Below, one piece after another: positions 19,018 to 32,376 of a stretch of DNA of 64,000 bases. Under the pieces are notes generated by a model. That model searched no databases, was not told where the DNA came from, and saw only the letters and a list, made by a program, of their open reading frames with translations. The stretch spans positions 1,126,236 to 1,190,235 of the forward strand of contig NW_003314321.1 in the NCBI RefSeq assembly GCF_000143415.4, written 5' to 3'. The DNA is from Selaginella moellendorffii. Its lineage: Eukaryota > Plantae > Lycopodiophyta. Each line of letters begins with the position of its first letter. The stretch's first letter is position 1. A program made the position numbers and the translations under genes.

Positions 19018-21485
19018 TTAGTCGCACTTAATGTTCCTATAGATCCTCCGAACAAACACGCTCGAGCCCAAGTAGCCCACCGCACCTGCGCATCAAACCA
19101 TCAAAGTTATCAATCCATCCGACCAAGAAAACAATCGGAGTGTATGGTACTCACCACAGAGGCTCCCCAGTCCAACGCAGAGCATCAGAGTGTAGCCGAA
19201 GTAGAAACTCGTTTGGAAAAACCCGGACATCTTGGTCTTCATGAAGTAGTAGTAAACCGAGTAGAGGTACACGTACGCGGCCGTGGATGCAGCTGAGAAG
19301 AAGGACGTCCATTGCCAGTGGTAGTTCTCCGCATTTAGCAGGAAGTACGTGCCCACGATGGTCACACAAACCGTGACAATGAGGAGGATCACAAACACGA
19401 GCAGCATGAAACCATAGACGTAGTAGACCTGCCATGCACCACGGACTCAGATCAGCAGACTGAAAAAACTGGGCTCGACCGGGTTACCTTGTAGTTCCAA
19501 AAGGACGTGAACACGAAATACATCTCTATGAAGATGCTCCCGAATGGGAGTAAGCCTCCCATAAGCGCCACGATGGATGGCTTGAGATACCATTTCTTCT
19601 CCGGTATCGGACGAGGGATGGTCTTCACCCTGCAGGGGTTATCAGGCGTCCCGTTCCAGTTTCGCCCCACAACAGTCCCAAGGAGAGCCAGGGGAAATGA
19701 AATGAATGCCCAGATGACAAAAACAACGACCTGTATAATAAAAGTTCAGGAGAGAAAAGAAAAATCATCTCTACAACGTACCATGGTACCGAAGGGAATG
19801 GCGGCCAACGAGCGATAGAAAATTGCGACAAAGTTGAGAACAAAACCGATGCCAAAGCAGATGAAAGGAAACAACGAGGCCGTTAGTAGCATGGACTTGA
19901 TCCAGTGCTTGCCTGCTCCAAAGCGTGTAAGGGATTGTCAGCACCACAGGTAGAAGCATTACCTACCATCGTTTCGCGAGTAAAACCCGCCACTGACATA
20001 ACCGGAGATGAATGACGTAAGAGCGTAGCATACAATGAAGGTTGTCACTATTGCTCCCCGCCTGCATCAACACAGGGCGAGGCGAGCGATGAGCACCTCG
20101 GCCGCAGGGTGACAGATACTTACCCAACATAAAGCATCCCGACGATGGCCAGCAAGATCACCAGAAAGACTAGCGCAGCCAGTTGAGCACCAGTACCAAC
20201 AAGCGAAGACAGCAAAACAAGATAGCGTGGCGGTCTGAAGACATCACCGTGGACAAGCTTCCATCCAGACTCTTCACTCACGTCCCTTTCCTGGAAAAGT
20301 TCTTTCAAACACTGCAATGCGCAACATAAACGTACCAGAGTCTCGAGATCATCTTCCTCGCGGGCATACTTGGCATAGTCATTTTTCAGCGTTCTCATGA
20401 GTATCATAGACACCAGGCCAGTCAGAAATATGACCATCATGAACGAGTTGAAGAGCGAAAACCAGTGAATCTGCACGAAGATACCACAAGCAGGAGTTTA
20501 AACTTGTACAAAGACAGACAACAACAAACCTGATGCTCAAAGAATGGATAGTCCAGGTAGGCATCAAATCTCTTGTGGAAACTCGTGTTTGTCTCGATCC
20601 ATTTCACGGAGTATGTAAACTCCAGGGATTTGCCAGGCGAAAGTGGCTGCAGACCATCTTGCGTAAGGTTGACTTGGATGATCTACATAGCGGTAAACAT
20701 AATCACCATCACAGAGAGAGGAAAAGAGAGTAAGCACCTGGTTTTTGTTGTACTTGATAACGAGGTGCTTGTGAGTGTAAATGGCTACATTCTGCTCCTC
20801 CGCCTTGCCGTGGTGGTACTCACCGACAAATCCTGCGGGGACTAAGAATCTACTGGACGCAAGAGAGAAATGGAGAAAGACGTACCCCACAGTGGCAAGT
20901 CGTCTGGTTGGAAAAAGGCGCCGGTTAGAGAGTTTTCAAAGAAAGGAAGAATGGCTTACCCATAAAGAACTCGAACCAGTATGTTTCCTCGATGGCCGCT
21001 CTGAATTCCATGGCTTTTCTCTGATCCAGATCCAGCTTGCATATCGTAACCTTGTCAACAGACTCTGCAACACGATGTGCGCTGTGAGTGCCTGCGCCGG
21101 CAGAGCGAAGGCATTGACTTACTCTTGAACTTGATGTCGATCTGGCTGTCGATGAGCTCGTTCCCTTCCAGCACCGCTCCCAATCCCCCCCATTTGTGTG
21201 CGGGATTCGCATTTCCGGGTTGGCAGAAGGGCAGGCTGTAGTAGTTGTAAGTCTCCTGGGGATTGTTGTAGGGGCCGACCTTGTTCACCCACAGCACAAC
21301 AGCGTCGCCAATGTCGTACTGCCCAAGCAAGCACGCACCGCCACAGCACGCGTGAGTCCCCGATCCGGCAAAGCGAGAAAGAGAAATGGGCAAGAAATCT
21401 TCACCTTGTGATCGTATTCGGAAGCTAGGGCGAGCTGCAGCAGGCACGCCAGCAGCAGCCACGCCGGCAGGGAATGCATCCTCAT
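19018..21485 (-). CDS. TMN1: Transmembrane 9 superfamily member (TMN1/TM9SF3-like)
   Basis: Signal peptide, [72 protein letters not shown] and C-terminal IYRNIKCD* (KXD/E Golgi motif). Confidence 0.95.
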
Positions 21486-21629
21486 CGCTCCCACCACTGG
21501 CAGCCCTAGACGCGGACTGCGCTCCCCCGGGCCCCTACAACTCCGATCTGGAGCTCCTTGCCCTAATCGAGAGCACTTTTATTTTTAACTCAAGATCCAT
21601 TTGCATTTTTCGGTACACGATCTAGGTAG

Positions 21630-23634
21630 TCAGTGCTGCATCCGGAAGAATGTGAGTGGCGAATTGTGGCGTAGCTTGTGGTAGCACACGAGCGTCACCG
21701 AGACGACGATGAAGGCTGTGCACAAGACTAGAATGGCCGCCACCAGCGCCGCGTTCACTTTGCTGCTCTTGCGGCCCTTGTCCTCACCACCAACGTAGTA
21801 CACCTGGGAGCGAGTACAAGGTTTTCACTCCATATCGATCGAGGGGTACACATACCTCGGCAGCGCTGCTGTTGGCTGGAAACGTGCCCGGCCTTGTCAC
21901 CGGCTGCAAGCTTGACAAGCGCCCGTTCACAATCCTTCCTTTCAACTGCAAAAAACCACAAGAGAAGCAATCAGGCAAACTCTAGTAGAGCTCCTCCATG
22001 CCTGCCAGGTGCTGCCAGCGTAGGAGACGAGCTCGTAGACTGTCGCAGACGACGTGACGAGCCTGGAGCCAGTATCGGGATCGAATTCAACGCTCCCGGT
22101 GCATCCCTTGTGCGCTCTCCCTGATCTCAGCGCCGCCAGCACACTGCTGGCGTTTACGGCTGCAATGCCTTGTGAGGATGCTTGATTCGCAGCCTCGAAC
22201 AGAGACGTGACCGCGTCGATCAAGTAAGGCACGTACGAGGTGCTCCGGTTCGATGCAAAGCCTGGATACTCTTGCTGACGCTCGCTCCAGTGCTCGTAAA
22301 ACTTCTGGCACACTAGCTCGTCCGACGGGTCACCACCTGCAAAGCGCATTCAATGAATTCATGCTTGGCAAAAGCTATGGCGCTAACTACATACCATATG
22401 GTGCAATGCCAATCTCTCCTTCCAGCCGACCACTCCCTTTGAGCAGGGATTCCCGATTAGATTCAATCCACAGTTGGTGTACGTACAGTCAGAGTATATT
22501 AGTACCTTCTTGTGTTATATCCACTGCAGTGACGCCATCGCTGCCCAAATACCACCAAGGATAAGACGCTTTGCCCTGCTCTGGCTTGTGTAATTGGCAT
22601 CGGAAACCATAATTATACAGAAACGCACCAGCTTAAGCACCAGCTCCCACATTTGCGTGGCTACGGATGGTTGGAGTGCCAAGACGAGGAAGGTGTAAGG
22701 CTCAATCGCGTTGAACATGCCGTCGATTTGCCTCGAGTTCAAGGTGGCGTTCACTCCCATCTCCAGCAGCTCCATCCTGAAGACGTTTCCGTCGCACAGA
22801 GACTGTGCATGCAAGAATATAAATTGAAATCACTCGTTACTTACGCGTATTTGTTGGGCCAGGGGCAAGCTGTATGCGTCGTTGGTGTAGACGATCGTGA
22901 CGTTTGTCGCTTGCAACTGGTTCACCTGTTTGCCACCCACCATTTATTACATGGAGTGCGTATCACCATATGCATGCATGATTGTTACCATTGCGGCGAT
23001 GGAGGAGGCTTGATGGTCGTCACTGTACCTGTAGGTGAAGATCCACGCACAATCGTGAATGGGTGTCACACTGGGTTCTGAAGTGCTTACACTGTCCTGA
23101 AAAGGTTTGGGTATAGGTCCCTGTTGGAGAGGCGAGCAGCTGTGGCCGCAAACGAGACGAGCGGGATCTGATGCTCTTGCAACACCTTGGCTGCTGCAGC
23201 GGCTGCTTGGCTGCAGGCGGGGCCGACGACCCCAAGCAGCGCGCCCGGCCCCCCTTTGCTCCGCGATTCCTCAACCAGCCGTGCCGCCGCGTTCTGGGCC
23301 GATGTCCAGTCGCACCCACACCTCTCCCAAACGCCCTCCAATCTCAGTGCGGAATCCCTGGCCTCGCTGTTGAGGACCTGCACTGCGACTTGGAACGCGG
23401 ATTGCCTATTGGTTTCAGATGGGCGGAGTGAGGAGGACTGTGATTACATCTACCTCTGTATATATCAGCTAAGTTAAAGGTGGATACCGACCATTCGAGC
23501 GAGAGAGATTCCGGAATTGCCCAGTCCGGCTCCGACGACAGGAAGCCAATGTGGAGGGTTTTCGCGCTGCTCGCTCCGGAGAAGGCTGCGGCAGCCATGG
23601 CCATGAGCAGCAAGAGGAAGGCTTGGGGCCGCAT
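21630..23634 (-). CDS. Type I membrane protein: signal peptide + ANF-receptor/LIVBP-like (periplasmic-binding type 1) domain + single TM + 15-aa tail; multi-exon
   Basis: TLHIGFL..AFQVAVQVLN..GVVGPACSQAA..LQEHQIPLVSFAATAARLSNRDLYPNLFRTV|YSDDHQA..VTIVYTNDAYS..YLIDAV..GCTGSVEFD; the last exon encodes AALVAAILVLCTAFIVVSVTLVCY then HKLRHNSPLTFFRMQH*. Confidence 0.8.
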
Positions 23635-23977
23635 TCTCTTGAAATCTTGCGATGATCGCTCGCAAGCGGGCCGGGGCATTCGAATGAAGTACTATTGTCG
23701 AGATCACCACATGATATTATATATCAATCTTTTACTCTGACACAACAGATTAAACTCGGAGACAACAGTTGCTTGCAAGCAAAGTTGGTCCAACCGGGAG
23801 ACGAAGCGAAAAAACCATGTGCAGTGGGTGTGTGTGTGTGTCGAGAGAGGGAATTCCCAAATTTCCAGATCCAGCGGCTGGTGGAGCTGCCACGTGAACG
23901 CGATTTAAAGCCACATCCATCCAGCGGATTAGGGCAAGGCTTAGGGTTTTCGCGCGGAGCAACAGAGATCCACAGCC

Positions 23978-25305
23978 ATGGTGAGCGCGACGGCTTCTTT
24001 GCTAGCAACACCAAGCTGAATATCAATGCTTTGTGATGCCGCAGTACTTCGGGGGATATGGCATCAATTTCTCGGCCTTGCCGTTTGAGCAGAATTATCG
24101 CTGCTATTCCGCCTCCTTCATCGACAAGGTAAGAGACTCTTCTCTCTCTCTCGCTCCACCCGGTTTTGCGACGTGCGCTTCTCCTTGCCAGCCTCATCTG
24201 GAGAACGGCGACAAAGTGATCATGCCTCCGTCCGCCCTGGACCGCCTGGCGTCGTTACGGATCGACTATCCCATGCTCTTTGAGGTGCACAATCCCTCCA
24301 CCTCGCGGACATCACACTGCGGAGTTCTCGAGTTCGTGGCCGACGAAGGAATCATCATCATGCCTTACTGGGTGAGTGTAGCTAGACCAGCATCGTTTTC
24401 ACCCCAAGTGGCTGACACGGCGCTTCCTAGATGATGCAAAACCTCTTGCTTCAAGAGGGCGACCTTGTGAGAGTGAAAAGCGCGACGCTCCCCAAGGGCA
24501 GCTATGTCAAGTTGCAGCCTCACACCAAGGACTTTCTTGACATTTCCAACCCCAAGGCTGTGTAAGTAAGGTGCCACCAGCCTTGTACTTACTCTGCTAA
24601 CAGCTTTCCAAATTCCGTTTCTTCTTGCTTTGCAGATTAGAAACCACGCTGAGGAATTTCTCGTGCCTCACTGTGGGTGACAACATCATGGTGGCGTACA
24701 ACAACAAGAAGTACTACATTGATATTGTGGAAGCCAAGCCTGCACCAGCAATCTCAATCATCGAAACGGACTGCGAGGTTGACTTTGCTCCGCCACTCGA
24801 CTACAAAGAGCCAGAGAGGGCGGTGCCACCACAGCAGCCGCCTGCGGCCGCCACAGGTGACAAATTTGTCCATGCCTTCACTGTCTAGACAACTAGTGTG
24901 TGTGATTCGTGCAGCAGCTGACGGAGAAGCTGAGGCGGCCGAAGAGCCCAAGTTTAACGCTTTTACGGGTGTTGGAAGGAGACTAGATGGGAAGGCACCA
25001 AAGGTGTGGGCTGTGCCTTCCACAGAAGAGGCTCCGGCTGTTTCCGCACCAAAGTCTAAGGTAGTTCCTCCTGCTCCGGATCCCGCACAAAGACCGCATG
25101 GAAAGCTTGTGTTTGGGCCAGCAACGGCAAATGCTGCTGATGCAACTCCAAAGGTAGAGACCACACTCGTTGTTGTTACATCCCTGGTGTGTAATCTATC
25201 TCTTTTTGACAGCCACCCGAGAAGCCCAGTGAGGAGAAAGAAGAAGCTCCCAAGGAAGCAAAGTTTCAAGCCTTTACTGGCAGGAAGTACTCTTTGAAAG
25301 GTTGA
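23978..25305 (+). CDS. UFD1: Ubiquitin fusion degradation protein 1
   Basis: First coding exon is the ATG only; then [73 protein letters not shown] and [13 protein letters not shown]. Confidence 0.96.
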
Positions 25306-31723: not shown

Positions 31724-32078
31724 AGCCTACCAATGCGTCTAGCCCCAAATTTGACAAAATTGTATCATGATGTGGATAAAGGCAATTCCACTATTTAAAT
31801 TCTACCTACCCTTGGTTCCATTCCATCATCTTCCAGAAGACAAGACCTCTCTTATCATAGTTGCTTGCAAAGGTAAGGAACTTGATGCGCCCTATAGCTA
31901 GCTTTGCATTTTCATGACAAGAGAGAGAGAGTGGGCTTTGTTGCTCCAACACGGTGTCGACGTGTCCACCCGCCGACTGACACGTGGACAGCTAACGGGT
32001 GCCTACAAAAGGGGGTTTAGGGCTGGTGGTGAGAGGGAGAGCGAGAGAGCGAGAGAGAGAGGGAGGAAGCGCGTGTGT

Positions 32079-32376
32079 ATGCCTGCTGCTGCTTGATGCC
32101 CGCCGCCTGCCGCATGACTCCTTTCAATCCTGTCTTCTTTATGTTCCTCTTCCTCGTCTTTCCTTTCAAGTATCTCCACTTGTGTTTGATAGTCAAGCCG
32201 TTAATACAGGGCAGCGCGCCCGTGTCTTAGATTCGTCCATCTGCCAGATCGTTGCACTGCTATATGGCTCCAGCATCGCAAAACAAAGGAGGTATGTGTC
32301 ATCCCTTTCCCGGATCGTTGTTTGCTTGCACACGCTTGCTTACGCTTGGAGACTGCGCAGGGGGCCGCGTCCATGA
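32079..32376 (+). promoter_or_regulatory. uORF-containing leader of PAO: tiny uORF, 44-aa AUG uORF and an AUG-less overlapping frame
   Basis: ATG 32079 MPAAA* overlaps ATG 32096 (TGATG), which runs to TAG 32230. A third frame (..[25 protein letters not shown]..) overlaps the main ATG and stops at 32376. Confidence 0.7.

What the first reader, a model, noticed from the sequence alone, without database searches (positions are those of the whole stretch)
21630..23634. Stand-alone Venus-flytrap (ANF-receptor/LIVBP) single-pass membrane protein: candidate undescribed plant receptor class
Seen: a signal peptide, a full type-1 periplasmic-binding fold, one hydrophobic helix and a 15-aa tail, with a clean stop ~145 nt from the next gene's ATG, so no room for further domains. 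Established: in land plants this fold is normally the N-terminal domain of GLR channels (followed by S1/pore/S2). In animals it binds ligand in GABA-B/mGluR and natriuretic-peptide receptors, and the domain+TM+short-tail layout is that of the NPR-C clearance receptor. The GPACS motif looks more like those receptors than like typical GLRs (from recall). Inference: a ligand-binding co-receptor, decoy or GLR modulator, possibly for amino acids or peptides. Multiple spliceable introns argue against a decayed fragment.
Basis: partly seen in the sequence, partly recalled or inferred. Interest (0 to 1): 0.85.

Follow-up and report, generated by a model that had tools for sequence, protein, structure and literature searches.

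The report
Stand-alone membrane-anchored Venus-flytrap receptor family
This Selaginella gene is expressed and makes a cell-surface-type protein that is only a ligand-binding "Venus flytrap" domain, one membrane helix and a 16-residue tail; it belongs to an uncharacterised family kept from conjugating green algae to ferns, not found in seed plants, with every residue that animal receptors use to hold an amino acid intact.

Summary
A 10-exon minus-strand gene (CDS 23634..21630) encodes 487 aa: signal peptide, a complete ANF-receptor/type-1 PBP domain, one TM helix and a 16-aa tail. The stop lies 144 nt before the next gene's ATG.

- **Expression:** spliced contigs from four studies confirm all nine introns, one of them GC-AG, and show no splicing into further domains.
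- **Identity:** the organism is Selaginella moellendorffii. RefSeq XP_024544740.1 ("metabotropic glutamate receptor-like protein E", an automatic name) matches the RNA-verified protein exactly.
- **Not a decayed GLR:** it is one member of a sharply delimited family. The same architecture occurs in Zygnematophyceae, liverworts, mosses, lycophytes and ferns. No seed-plant member was returned.
- **Tree:** the family tree largely follows the species tree.
- **Ligand site:** the five residues that bind the alpha-amino-acid moiety in mGlu1 are conserved in all 32 members (the serine is threonine in three).
- **Other conserved features:** a lobe-1 cysteine pair, a small-xxx-small motif in the TM helix of most members, and a near-C-terminal F-V-R-M-L-like motif.

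Most likely it is a dimeric amino-acid (or amino-acid-like) sensing subunit that acts through a partner. I found no paper on it. The scan also noted the other haplotype (s1-394700). Novelty: a new variant of a known kind. Interest 0.62.

The parts
21574..23692 (-). Transcribed span of the gene as seen in spliced RNA-type contigs (5' ends at 23663-23692, 3' end at or below 21574)
   Evidence: table 8: X4 record 14 covers 23676..21574 with all introns removed; X2 record 9 reaches 23692
23717..23723 (-). TATATAA box about 30 nt upstream of the furthest contig 5' end
   Evidence: sequence reading; promoter function is inferred
23677..23679 (-). Upstream in-frame ATG used by the RefSeq model (adds 15 aa, MPRPACERSSQDFKR); it lies within about 13 nt of the apparent transcript start, so the ATG at 23634 may be the main start
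23492..23634 (-). Exon 1: start codon, signal peptide (hydrophobic core aa 5-18, 23622..23581), first beta-strand of the VFT
23091..23405 (-). Exon 2: VFT lobe 1 with invariant W48, C79, GVVGPAC112-S113 (23233..23210), SFAAT136 (23155..23138) and FRT
   Evidence: Pfam ANF_receptor E 8.7e-14 on this exon alone; invariant columns
22989..23028 (-). Exon 3: YSD156-DHQ motif (equivalent of mGlu1 D208)
22845..22925 (-). Exon 4: conserved N-glycosylation sequon NVT and Y184 (equivalent of mGlu1 Y236)
22629..22802 (-). Exon 5: VFT lobe 2
22506..22575 (-). Exon 6: YPWWYLGSD264G motif (22563..22534; equivalent of mGlu1 D318). The RNA-supported acceptor is at 22575, 9 nt downstream of the old JGI model's
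22395..22436 (-). Exon 7 (14 aa, LEGEIGIAPY), missing from old model SELMODRAFT_423282
22002..22336 (-). Exon 8: return to lobe 1, with YPG, SYVPYLIDA and GCTGSVEFDPDTGSR; followed by a GC-AG intron (22001..21946)
   Evidence: Pfam ANF_receptor E 3.3e-4 on this exon; GC..AG joint present in all four runs
21856..21945 (-). Exon 9: last VFT strands (LKGRIVNG) and conserved RPG; start of the linker
21630..21803 (-). Exon 10: juxtamembrane linker, TM helix aa 446-471 (21758..21681), 16-aa cytosolic tail (21680..21633) with FFRM (21650..21639), and stop TGA (21632..21630)
   Evidence: (helix 463-491 of the 502-aa form)

Best explanation
The gene encodes a type-I membrane protein. Its whole extracytosolic part is one Venus-flytrap (type-1 periplasmic-binding-protein / ANF-receptor) domain with an intact alpha-amino-acid binding site.

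It is the Selaginella member of an old, mostly single-copy family found in Zygnematophyceae and non-seed land plants.

The most likely working is this. The flytrap closes on an amino acid or a close derivative in the apoplast or in a lumen. The protein acts as a dimer or a hetero-oligomer, through lobe-1 contacts and a small-xxx-small TM motif. The binding event is passed on through the TM helix and the short conserved tail (basic stretch plus an F-V-R-M-L-like motif near the C-terminus), either to a separate partner or to the trafficking machinery. The protein has no output domain of its own.

Shown: the gene structure, expression, fold, architecture, family range, and conservation of the binding-site, cysteine and tail positions. 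Inferred: the ligand class, dimerisation, topology and location, and the existence of a partner.
For: Gene and expression:
- Spliced contigs in 4 runs of 4 studies confirm all 9 introns and one mRNA form.
- 20 listed runs from 8 named studies hold part of the stretch.
- The protein is identical to RefSeq P0147 residues 16-502.

Domain and fold:
- Pfam ANF_receptor E 2.9e-30 across profile positions 2-337 of 353; no other domain.
- AF2 pLDDT 83.6, pTM 0.78.
- Foldseek and VIA-align: mGlu, CaSR, T1R, AtGLR3.4 and ligand-bound LivJ/LivK-type amino-acid binders at Z 37-38.

Family:
- Members of 480-590 aa in Closterium, Spirogloea, Mesotaenium, Netrium, Marchantia, Riccia, Calypogeia, Physcomitrium, Sphagnum, Diphasiastrum, Pteridium, Psilotum, Adiantum and Ceratopteris.
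- The score falls from 457 to 86 bits at the family edge.
- 27 of 29 members examined have the C-terminal TM helix and a short tail.
- Tree: family 100*, embryophytes 99*, bryophytes 96*, ferns 98*; the branching largely follows the species tree.

Binding site:
- HMMER alignment to mGlu7 and AtGLR3.4, together with the mGlu1 contact list in PMC2680970, places S113, T136, D156, Y184 and D264 at mGlu1 S165, T188, D208, Y236 and D318.
- Counts in 32 members: S/T 29/3, T 32, D 32, Y 32, D 32.

Other constraint:
- C79 and C112 are invariant; C298 and C367 largely co-occur (21 and 23 of 32).
- Five N-x-S/T sequons lie in the ectodomain and basic residues follow the TM helix.
- Allelic differences are 8 synonymous and 4 non-synonymous, none at a conserved site.
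Against: - No ligand, partner or location has been shown for any member.
- Four of the five 'amino-acid' positions are also kept in the AtGLR3.4 amino-terminal domain, which is not established as an amino-acid site. Part of the signature may therefore be inherited scaffold rather than proof of ligand.
- The Selaginella tail (FFRMQH) and TM motif (AALVAA instead of GGxIAG) are the most diverged in the family. Diphasiastrum lacks a clear F-V-R motif.
- The closed shape of the AF2 model is a prediction, not evidence of binding.
- The mapping onto mGlu1 numbers goes through mGlu7 and my knowledge of the mGlu1 sequence.
Confidence: 0.55

Rival explanations
1. Auxiliary or modulatory subunit of GLR channels. 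The membrane-tethered flytrap pairs with the amino-terminal-domain layer of GLR tetramers, or regulates their trafficking. This would be one specific case of the 'partner' in the best explanation.
For: The best solved sequence match of the family profile is the AtGLR3.4 amino-terminal domain, aligned over the full VFT (E 3.5e-27; Z 37.7, 20% identity). Flytrap domains of this class dimerise through lobe 1 (established knowledge of iGluR ATDs and class C receptors). Moss, liverwort and Selaginella all have GLRs (PMC11479355).
Against: With the same family HMM, AtGLR3.4 scores 98.6 bits. That is no closer than amoebozoan class C receptor flytraps (98-106 bits) and well below coral tandem-flytrap proteins (168-182 bits). 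GLRs were kept and expanded in seed plants, while this family was not found there. No co-occurrence or interaction data exist.
Confidence: 0.15
2. Clearance or decoy / binding-protein role, analogous to NPR-C. The protein binds its ligand at the surface and removes or buffers it by endocytosis, or hands it to a transporter. The conserved tail motif would be a sorting signal rather than a signalling contact.
For: The layout is the same as NPR-C: flytrap, one TM helix, short tail, no output domain. The tail is only about 15-25 aa, and its conserved part sits at or near the C-terminus, a usual place for ER-export or sorting motifs (inference). The best structural matches include transporter-associated amino-acid binding proteins.
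Against: NPR-C itself is a distant match (Z 29.6, rmsd 5.1, 14% identity). No recognised endocytic motif (YxxPhi, di-leucine) is conserved in the tail. Binding-protein-dependent uptake is not known in plants (established knowledge).
Confidence: 0.2
3. A recently truncated or decaying GLR or class C receptor copy, or a mis-modelled gene whose real transcript continues into channel, 7TM or kinase exons.
For: In seed plants this fold is known only as the N-terminal domain of GLRs (PMC11479355). The older JGI models of this gene were mis-spliced.
Against: All introns and the stop codon are confirmed in spliced contigs from four studies, with no other joints. The next gene, 144 nt downstream, is an unrelated TM9SF gene with its own ATG and signal peptide. 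The same architecture is kept in 27 of 29 homologues from algae to ferns. The family is a 100*-supported clade on a long stem. Allelic changes are mostly synonymous.
Confidence: 0.02

Closest known systems
Amino-terminal domain of plant glutamate receptor-like channels (AtGLR3.4, PDB 7lzh)
   Same: Same type-1 PBP fold. It is the best solved sequence match of the family profile, aligned over the whole domain (E 3.5e-27; Z 37.7, 20% identity). Shared motifs are SF-x-AT, F-x-RT and the D of the W-x-x-TD motif. Four of the five mGlu1-type contact positions are kept.
   Different: There is no S1/S2 ligand-binding domain and no pore (Lig_chan absent). GLR3.4 has GPQSS instead of GPACS, lacks the second Cys of the invariant pair, and has Cys instead of the invariant Tyr. 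At 98.6 bits it is no closer than protist class C flytraps.
Class C GPCR Venus-flytrap modules (mGlu, CaSR, T1R, GABA-B; Dictyostelium Grl proteins, the source of the RefSeq name)
   Same: Fold (Foldseek E about 1e-20; Z 37 for mGlu3 and T1r2a). All five residues that bind the alpha-amino-acid moiety in mGlu1 are kept. A Cys pair of the 'CD...GPxC' type resembles GABA-B, but that comparison rests on my recall and was not tested.
   Different: No cysteine-rich domain and no 7TM domain (NCD3G and 7tm_3 absent). Instead there is one TM helix and a 16-aa tail, so it cannot couple to G proteins in the class C manner.
Natriuretic peptide clearance receptor NPR-C
   Same: The same overall layout: signal peptide, one ANF-receptor-type flytrap, one TM helix, a short cytoplasmic tail and no enzymatic domain.
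   Different: A distant structural match (Z 29.6, rmsd 5.1, 14% identity). NPR-C binds a peptide across a dimer interface rather than a small molecule in the cleft (established knowledge). The plant family keeps the small-molecule amino-acid site.
Venus kinase receptors (VKR) of invertebrates
   Same: A flytrap joined through a single TM helix to the inside of the cell; activated by amino acids; the flytrap is of the class C / GABA-B type (PMC2680970).
   Different: VKRs carry an intracellular tyrosine kinase domain. This family has no intracellular domain.
Bacterial LivJ/LivK-type amino-acid binding proteins
   Same: The top structural matches are ligand-bound amino-acid binders (Z 36-38, rmsd 2.3-2.6). 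Pfam Peripla_BP_6 also scores (E 9e-14).
   Different: Those are soluble or lipid-anchored partners of ABC importers. This is a eukaryotic, glycosylation-sequon-bearing type-I membrane protein whose gene has nine introns.
Uncharacterised tandem-flytrap single-pass proteins of corals, sponges and Euglena (P0006/Pocillopora LOC131795997, P0089/Sycon, P0018/Euglena)
   Same: These are the nearest non-family hits of the family HMM (168-182, 140 and 109 bits). They also end in one TM helix and a short tail.
   Different: They have three or more flytraps in tandem and different tails. They fall outside the 100*-supported plant clade. Their function is also unknown.

Membership tests
ANF-receptor / type-1 periplasmic-binding-protein superfamily | Significant match to Pfam PF01094 over most of the profile | tested here: met
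   E 2.9e-30, 105.9 bits against a cut-off of 25.4, profile positions 2-337 of 353; the exons score on their own too
ANF-receptor / type-1 periplasmic-binding-protein superfamily | Two-lobed alpha/beta flytrap fold | tested here: met
   AF2 pLDDT 83.6; Z 37-38 over 340-372 aligned residues to LivJ-type binders, AtGLR3.4 and mGlu3
Plant GLR / ionotropic glutamate receptor | S1/S2 ligand-binding domain and pore (Lig_chan PF00060; SBP_bac_3 / Lig_chan-Glu_bd) | tested here: not met
   No such Pfam hit at E <= 0.1 in five family members. The CDS ends 16 aa after a single TM helix, and RNA shows no further exons
Class C GPCR | 7TM domain (7tm_3 PF00003), usually with the cysteine-rich NCD3G linker | tested here: not met
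   Absent. Only one hydrophobic segment follows the flytrap
Class C-type alpha-amino-acid binding site | Residues equivalent to mGlu1 S165, T188, D208, Y236 and D318 (PMC2680970) | tested here: met
   S113, T136, D156, Y184 and D264 by HMMER alignment to mGlu7. S/T, T, D, Y and D are present in 32 of 32 members. The transfer from mGlu7 to mGlu1 numbering relies on my knowledge of the mGlu1 sequence
Natriuretic peptide receptor family (NPR-C type) | Flytrap + single TM helix + short tail architecture | tested here: met
Natriuretic peptide receptor family (NPR-C type) | Specific sequence or structural kinship with NPR ectodomains | tested here: not met
   NPR-C Z 29.6 and GC-A Z 27.8, at ranks 45 and 50, with 14-15% identity. 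Neither is among the 60 best PDB sequence matches
Streptophyte VFT-TM family (defined here) | Signal peptide, one VFT with GVVGPAC(S/T), SFAAT, FRT, YPWWYxGxDG and RPG, then one TM helix and a short tail with an F-V-R-M-L-like motif | tested here: met
   All motifs are present in the window protein; the tail variant is FFRMQH. It sits inside the 100* clade next to Diphasiastrum

The most novel reading that the evidence does not exclude
This family is a previously unrecognised class of plant surface receptor for amino acids or a related small signal. It arose before land plants, works through a still unknown membrane partner, and was lost as a whole in the seed-plant lineage. It would be a sensing route separate from GLR channels and receptor kinases, and directly testable in Marchantia and Physcomitrium, for each of which the searches returned one gene.
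Probability: 0.35. Interest if true: 0.8.

Novelty: new variant of a known kind. Interest (0 to 1): 0.62.

Why it matters
In plants, the Venus-flytrap fold has been discussed only as the poorly understood N-terminal domain of GLR channels. How plants sense extracellular amino acids remains an open question.

Here the flytrap exists as a separate membrane-anchored protein. Its amino-acid site is fully conserved, and it has been kept since the common ancestor of Zygnematophyceae and land plants. No seed-plant member was returned, which would explain why work on Arabidopsis never met it.

The searches returned one gene each for Marchantia, Physcomitrium and Selaginella, so knockouts, localisation and ligand screens on the soluble ectodomain are simple. 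If it proves to be a sensor, it adds a receptor type to plant signalling. It also gives an evolutionary comparison for class C receptors, NPR-C and the tandem-flytrap proteins of corals and sponges.

Tried and rejected
- **First hand-built gene model.** It had the wrong exon-6 acceptor and a 34-nt GT-AG intron 8. RNA contigs replaced it.
- **Exon 2 in the ESM Atlas by features.** It returned only generic ANF-receptor clusters at scores of 0.90 or below, so it added nothing.
- **Gene neighbourhood in other species.** The Marchantia protein was not on record, and the Diphasiastrum locus showed no called neighbours. This gave no synteny information.
- **Looking for GLRs among the exon-2 hits.** There were none; the hits were class C receptors and tandem-flytrap proteins. 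I therefore had no GLR amino-terminal-domain sequences for a joint tree. The only GLR sequence seen was printed inside a PDB alignment, and I did not retype it.
- **Structure search of the ESM Atlas.** It gave only generic class C, GLR and LivJ clusters.
- **Literature.** No paper mentions the gene identifiers or a stand-alone plant flytrap protein. The library holds open-access papers only, so this is not proof that none exists.
- **Rejected readings.** A truncated GLR, a pseudogene, and read-through into TM9SF. One merged contig (X3 record 11) spans both genes, but the stop codon and a separate TM9SF start and signal peptide rule out a fusion protein.
Full report
**1. What is in the sequence**

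The feature lies on the minus strand. Reading it gives an ATG at 23634 and a run of short introns. The stop TGA is at 21632-21630.

My first hand model translated without stops but was wrong in two details. Contigs of four public runs from four different studies were laid on 20600-24600. They carry the spliced form, so they must derive from RNA. They show nine joints, and each is seen in at least three of the four runs:
- Introns 23491-23406, 23090-23029, 22988-22926, 22844-22803, 22628-22576, 22505-22437, 22394-22337, 22001-21946 and 21855-21804.
- Eight are GT-AG. Intron 8 is GC-AG.
- The exon-6 acceptor is at 22575.

One contig (X4 record 14, 1564 nt) covers 23676 to 21574 with all introns removed. 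No joint leads out of the gene.

The resulting CDS is 1464 nt and encodes 487 aa. It is identical to residues 16-502 of RefSeq XP_024544740.1 (P0147), which sits on the same 1.25-Mb scaffold. RefSeq starts 15 codons earlier, at the ATG at 23679. That ATG is within about 13 nt of the furthest contig 5' end (23692), and a TATATAA lies at 23723-23717. The ATG at 23634 may therefore be the main start. Either start gives a signal peptide.

The older JGI models SELMODRAFT_423282 and SELMODRAFT_450418 are mis-spliced in several places.

**2. Anatomy of the protein (487-aa numbering)**

- A hydrophobic signal core at aa 5-18.
- A complete ANF-receptor / type-1 PBP domain. Pfam PF01094 gives E 2.9e-30 over profile positions 2-337 of 353. 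PF13458 also scores. Nothing else does.
- A short Ser/Gly/Lys-rich linker.
- One strongly hydrophobic helix at aa 446-471.
- The 16-residue tail HKLRHNSPLTFFRMQH.
- Five N-x-S/T sequons in the ectodomain and a basic stretch after the helix. Together these fit a type-I topology with the flytrap outside the cytosol (inference).

The stop lies 144 nt upstream of the ATG (21485) of the next minus-strand gene. That gene is a TM9SF homologue with its own signal peptide. The divergent plus-strand neighbour at 23979 is a UFD1 homologue. Both neighbour names come from my reading of the translations.

**3. Organism and family**

A full-database HMMER search with exon 2 and two word-indexed searches identify the organism as Selaginella moellendorffii. 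They also reveal a sharply bounded family. The range is extended by a third search with a fern member as query. The members returned are:
- Lycophytes: Selaginella (two alleles) and Diphasiastrum.
- Ferns: Pteridium, Psilotum, Adiantum and Ceratopteris.
- Mosses: Physcomitrium and Sphagnum.
- Liverworts: Marchantia, Riccia and Calypogeia.
- Zygnematophyceae: Closterium (several paralogues), Spirogloea, Mesotaenium and Netrium.

With the family profile, scores fall from 457 bits (the weakest member) to 86 bits (a class C GPCR). No seed-plant protein was returned, even with the fern query. The database includes NCBI nr and UniRef. Absence from seed plants is therefore likely but not proven, because only the 8000 candidates sharing most words are scored.

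Of 29 members examined, 27 have the same layout. The exceptions are two Closterium models without a TM segment.

A maximum-likelihood tree was built from 26 members plus 19 flytrap domains of other proteins (quick search, SH-aLRT support). It shows:
- The family as a clade with 100* support on a long stem.
- Embryophytes at 99*, bryophytes at 96*, ferns at 98*.
- The algal members as the other half, at 83.

This matches the species phylogeny as far as it is resolved. It argues for vertical descent since the common ancestor of Zygnematophyceae and land plants. The two lycophytes are not joined to each other, and the root is not inferred.

**4. Constraint**

The window and the transcript contigs differ at 12 CDS positions. 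Eight are synonymous and four are not (A21G in the signal peptide, S343A, S443N in the linker, T467S in the TM helix). None touches a conserved position. These four are exactly the differences from the other haplotype's protein, P0099.

Across the first 17 members aligned, 36 columns are invariant.

**5. Fold and nearest relatives**

An AlphaFold2 model of the allelic protein with the family alignment is confident (pLDDT 83.6, pTM 0.78). The flytrap spans residues 39-436 and the TM helix 463-491 of the 502-aa form.
- Foldseek matches class C flytraps (mGlu5, mGlu2, CaSR) and AtGLR3.4 at E about 1e-20 and 16-21% identity.
- An all-against-representatives structural search gives Z 36-38 for ligand-bound bacterial amino-acid binders, AtGLR3.4 (Z 37.7, 20% identity), mGlu3 with glutamate and T1r2a with glutamine.
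- GABA-B subunits reach Z 31-33. NPR-C reaches only Z 29.6 (rmsd 5.1).

By sequence, the best solved match of the family profile is the AtGLR3.4 amino-terminal domain, aligned over the whole flytrap (E 3.5e-27, 98.6 bits). Next is mGlu7 (81.7 bits, first two-thirds only).

With the same HMM, other proteins score as follows:

| Protein | Score (bits) |
|---|---|
| Coral protein, each of its three flytraps (cluster with Pocillopora verrucosa LOC131795997) | 168-182 |
| Sponge protein (Sycon) | 140 |
| Euglena | 109 |
| Amoebozoan class C receptors | 98-106 |

The GLR amino-terminal domain is therefore not a specially close relative. The idea of a recently truncated GLR is rejected. A proper joint tree with GLR amino-terminal domains could not be made, because no GLR sequence could be fetched with the tools.

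**6. The binding site**

[quoted passage not shown] The HMMER alignment of the family profile to mGlu7 and AtGLR3.4 gives these pairings:

| Family | mGlu7 | AtGLR3.4 |
|---|---|---|
| GPAC-S | GASG-S | GPQS-S |
| FAA-T | YAS-T | FGA-T |
| TVYx-D | VVPP-D | TTQN-D |
| xV-Y-G | GS-Y-G | DE-C-G |
| LGT-D-G | VGS-D-S | IAT-D-W |

Carried over to mGlu1 numbering (my knowledge of the mGlu1 sequence), these are S113, T136, D156, Y184 and D264 of the window protein. In a 32-member alignment the counts are S/T 29/3, T 32, D 32, Y 32 and D 32.

Also invariant are L44, W48, Q159, W259, G265 and the pair C79/C112. A second pair, C298/C367, is present in 21 and 23 of the 32 members and is absent from most Closterium paralogues.

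This is the strongest pointer to function: a small ligand carrying an alpha-amino-acid group. One caveat applies. AtGLR3.4's amino-terminal domain keeps four of the five positions, so some of this may be inherited scaffold.

**7. TM helix and tail**

Most members begin the TM helix with N-G-G-x-I-A-G, a small-xxx-small pattern. Selaginella has N-A-A-L-V-A-A.

After a basic stretch, the tail ends in F-V-R-M-L or a close variant. Examples are FVRIT, FVRMTR, FNRL and FIRTMH, and FFRMQH here. Diphasiastrum and a few Closterium paralogues are diverged.

Conservation of so short a tail from algae to ferns argues that it does something, such as binding a partner or sorting. Which of these it does is unknown.

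**8. How it most likely works, and rivals**

Best explanation (about 0.55): a dimeric, membrane-anchored amino-acid (or amino-acid-like) sensor without an output domain, acting through a partner or through trafficking.

Rivals:
- A GLR auxiliary subunit (0.15). This is a special case of the partner idea. It is weakened by the lack of special kinship with GLR amino-terminal domains, and by the family not being found in seed plants, which kept GLRs.
- An NPR-C-like clearance or binding role (0.2). The layout fits, but there is no kinship and no recognised endocytic motif.
- A truncated or mis-modelled gene (0.02). This is contradicted by RNA, homologues and constraint.

**9. Novelty**

The gene is annotated in RefSeq under the automatic name "metabotropic glutamate receptor-like protein E". 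The name does not fit, because there is no 7TM domain.

I found no paper naming any member or describing a stand-alone plant flytrap protein. The library is open-access only, so this is not proof.

The same feature was noted by this scan on the other haplotype (s1-394700).

I rate it a new variant of a known kind. The known kind is the Venus-flytrap receptors; the new variant is a flytrap-only, single-pass family of streptophytes not found in seed plants. Interest is 0.62. It is real, conserved and easy to test in Marchantia and Physcomitrium, but its function is still inferred.

Noticed in passing
window 21483-21630 and 21557-21574: The flytrap gene and the downstream TM9SF gene (ATG at 21485, same strand) nearly abut or overlap as transcripts. 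The flytrap mRNA contig ends at 21574 and a TM9SF contig starts at 21557. One assembled contig (X3 record 11) runs through both genes. This could be a very short intergenic spacer or read-through.
   Followed up: partly
window 22001-21946 (minus strand): Intron 8 is a GC-AG intron (GCATGG...TTGCAG, 56 nt), confirmed in all four runs. The older JGI gene models mis-handled this junction.
   Followed up: yes
P0006 / P0151 (Pocillopora verrucosa LOC131795997), P0089 (Sycon ciliatum), P0018 (Euglena gracilis): These are uncharacterised proteins with three or more tandem flytraps, one TM helix and a short tail. The coral flytraps are the closest non-family relatives of the plant family (168-182 bits). 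The coral tail holds 'GPQVFRQ', which resembles the algal 'GPQFVRML'; this may be chance.
   Followed up: partly
window 23979-24600 (plus strand): This is a divergently transcribed UFD1-like gene (ubiquitin fusion degradation 1). Its introns at 23980-24043, 24127-24189 and 24371-24429 are confirmed by the same contigs. About 345 nt separate the two start codons.
   Followed up: no
P0124, P0108, P0121, P0029 (Closterium spp.): These are longer Closterium models (851-1348 aa) that join a family member to other domains, for example OTU (PF02338). They are probably merged gene models. Closterium also has TM-less paralogues (P0134, P0135).
   Followed up: no
window 32071-32376: An earlier first-reader note (s1-399018) reports an AUG-less peptide uORF overlapping a PAO start codon in this window. 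It is unrelated to this finding.
   Followed up: no
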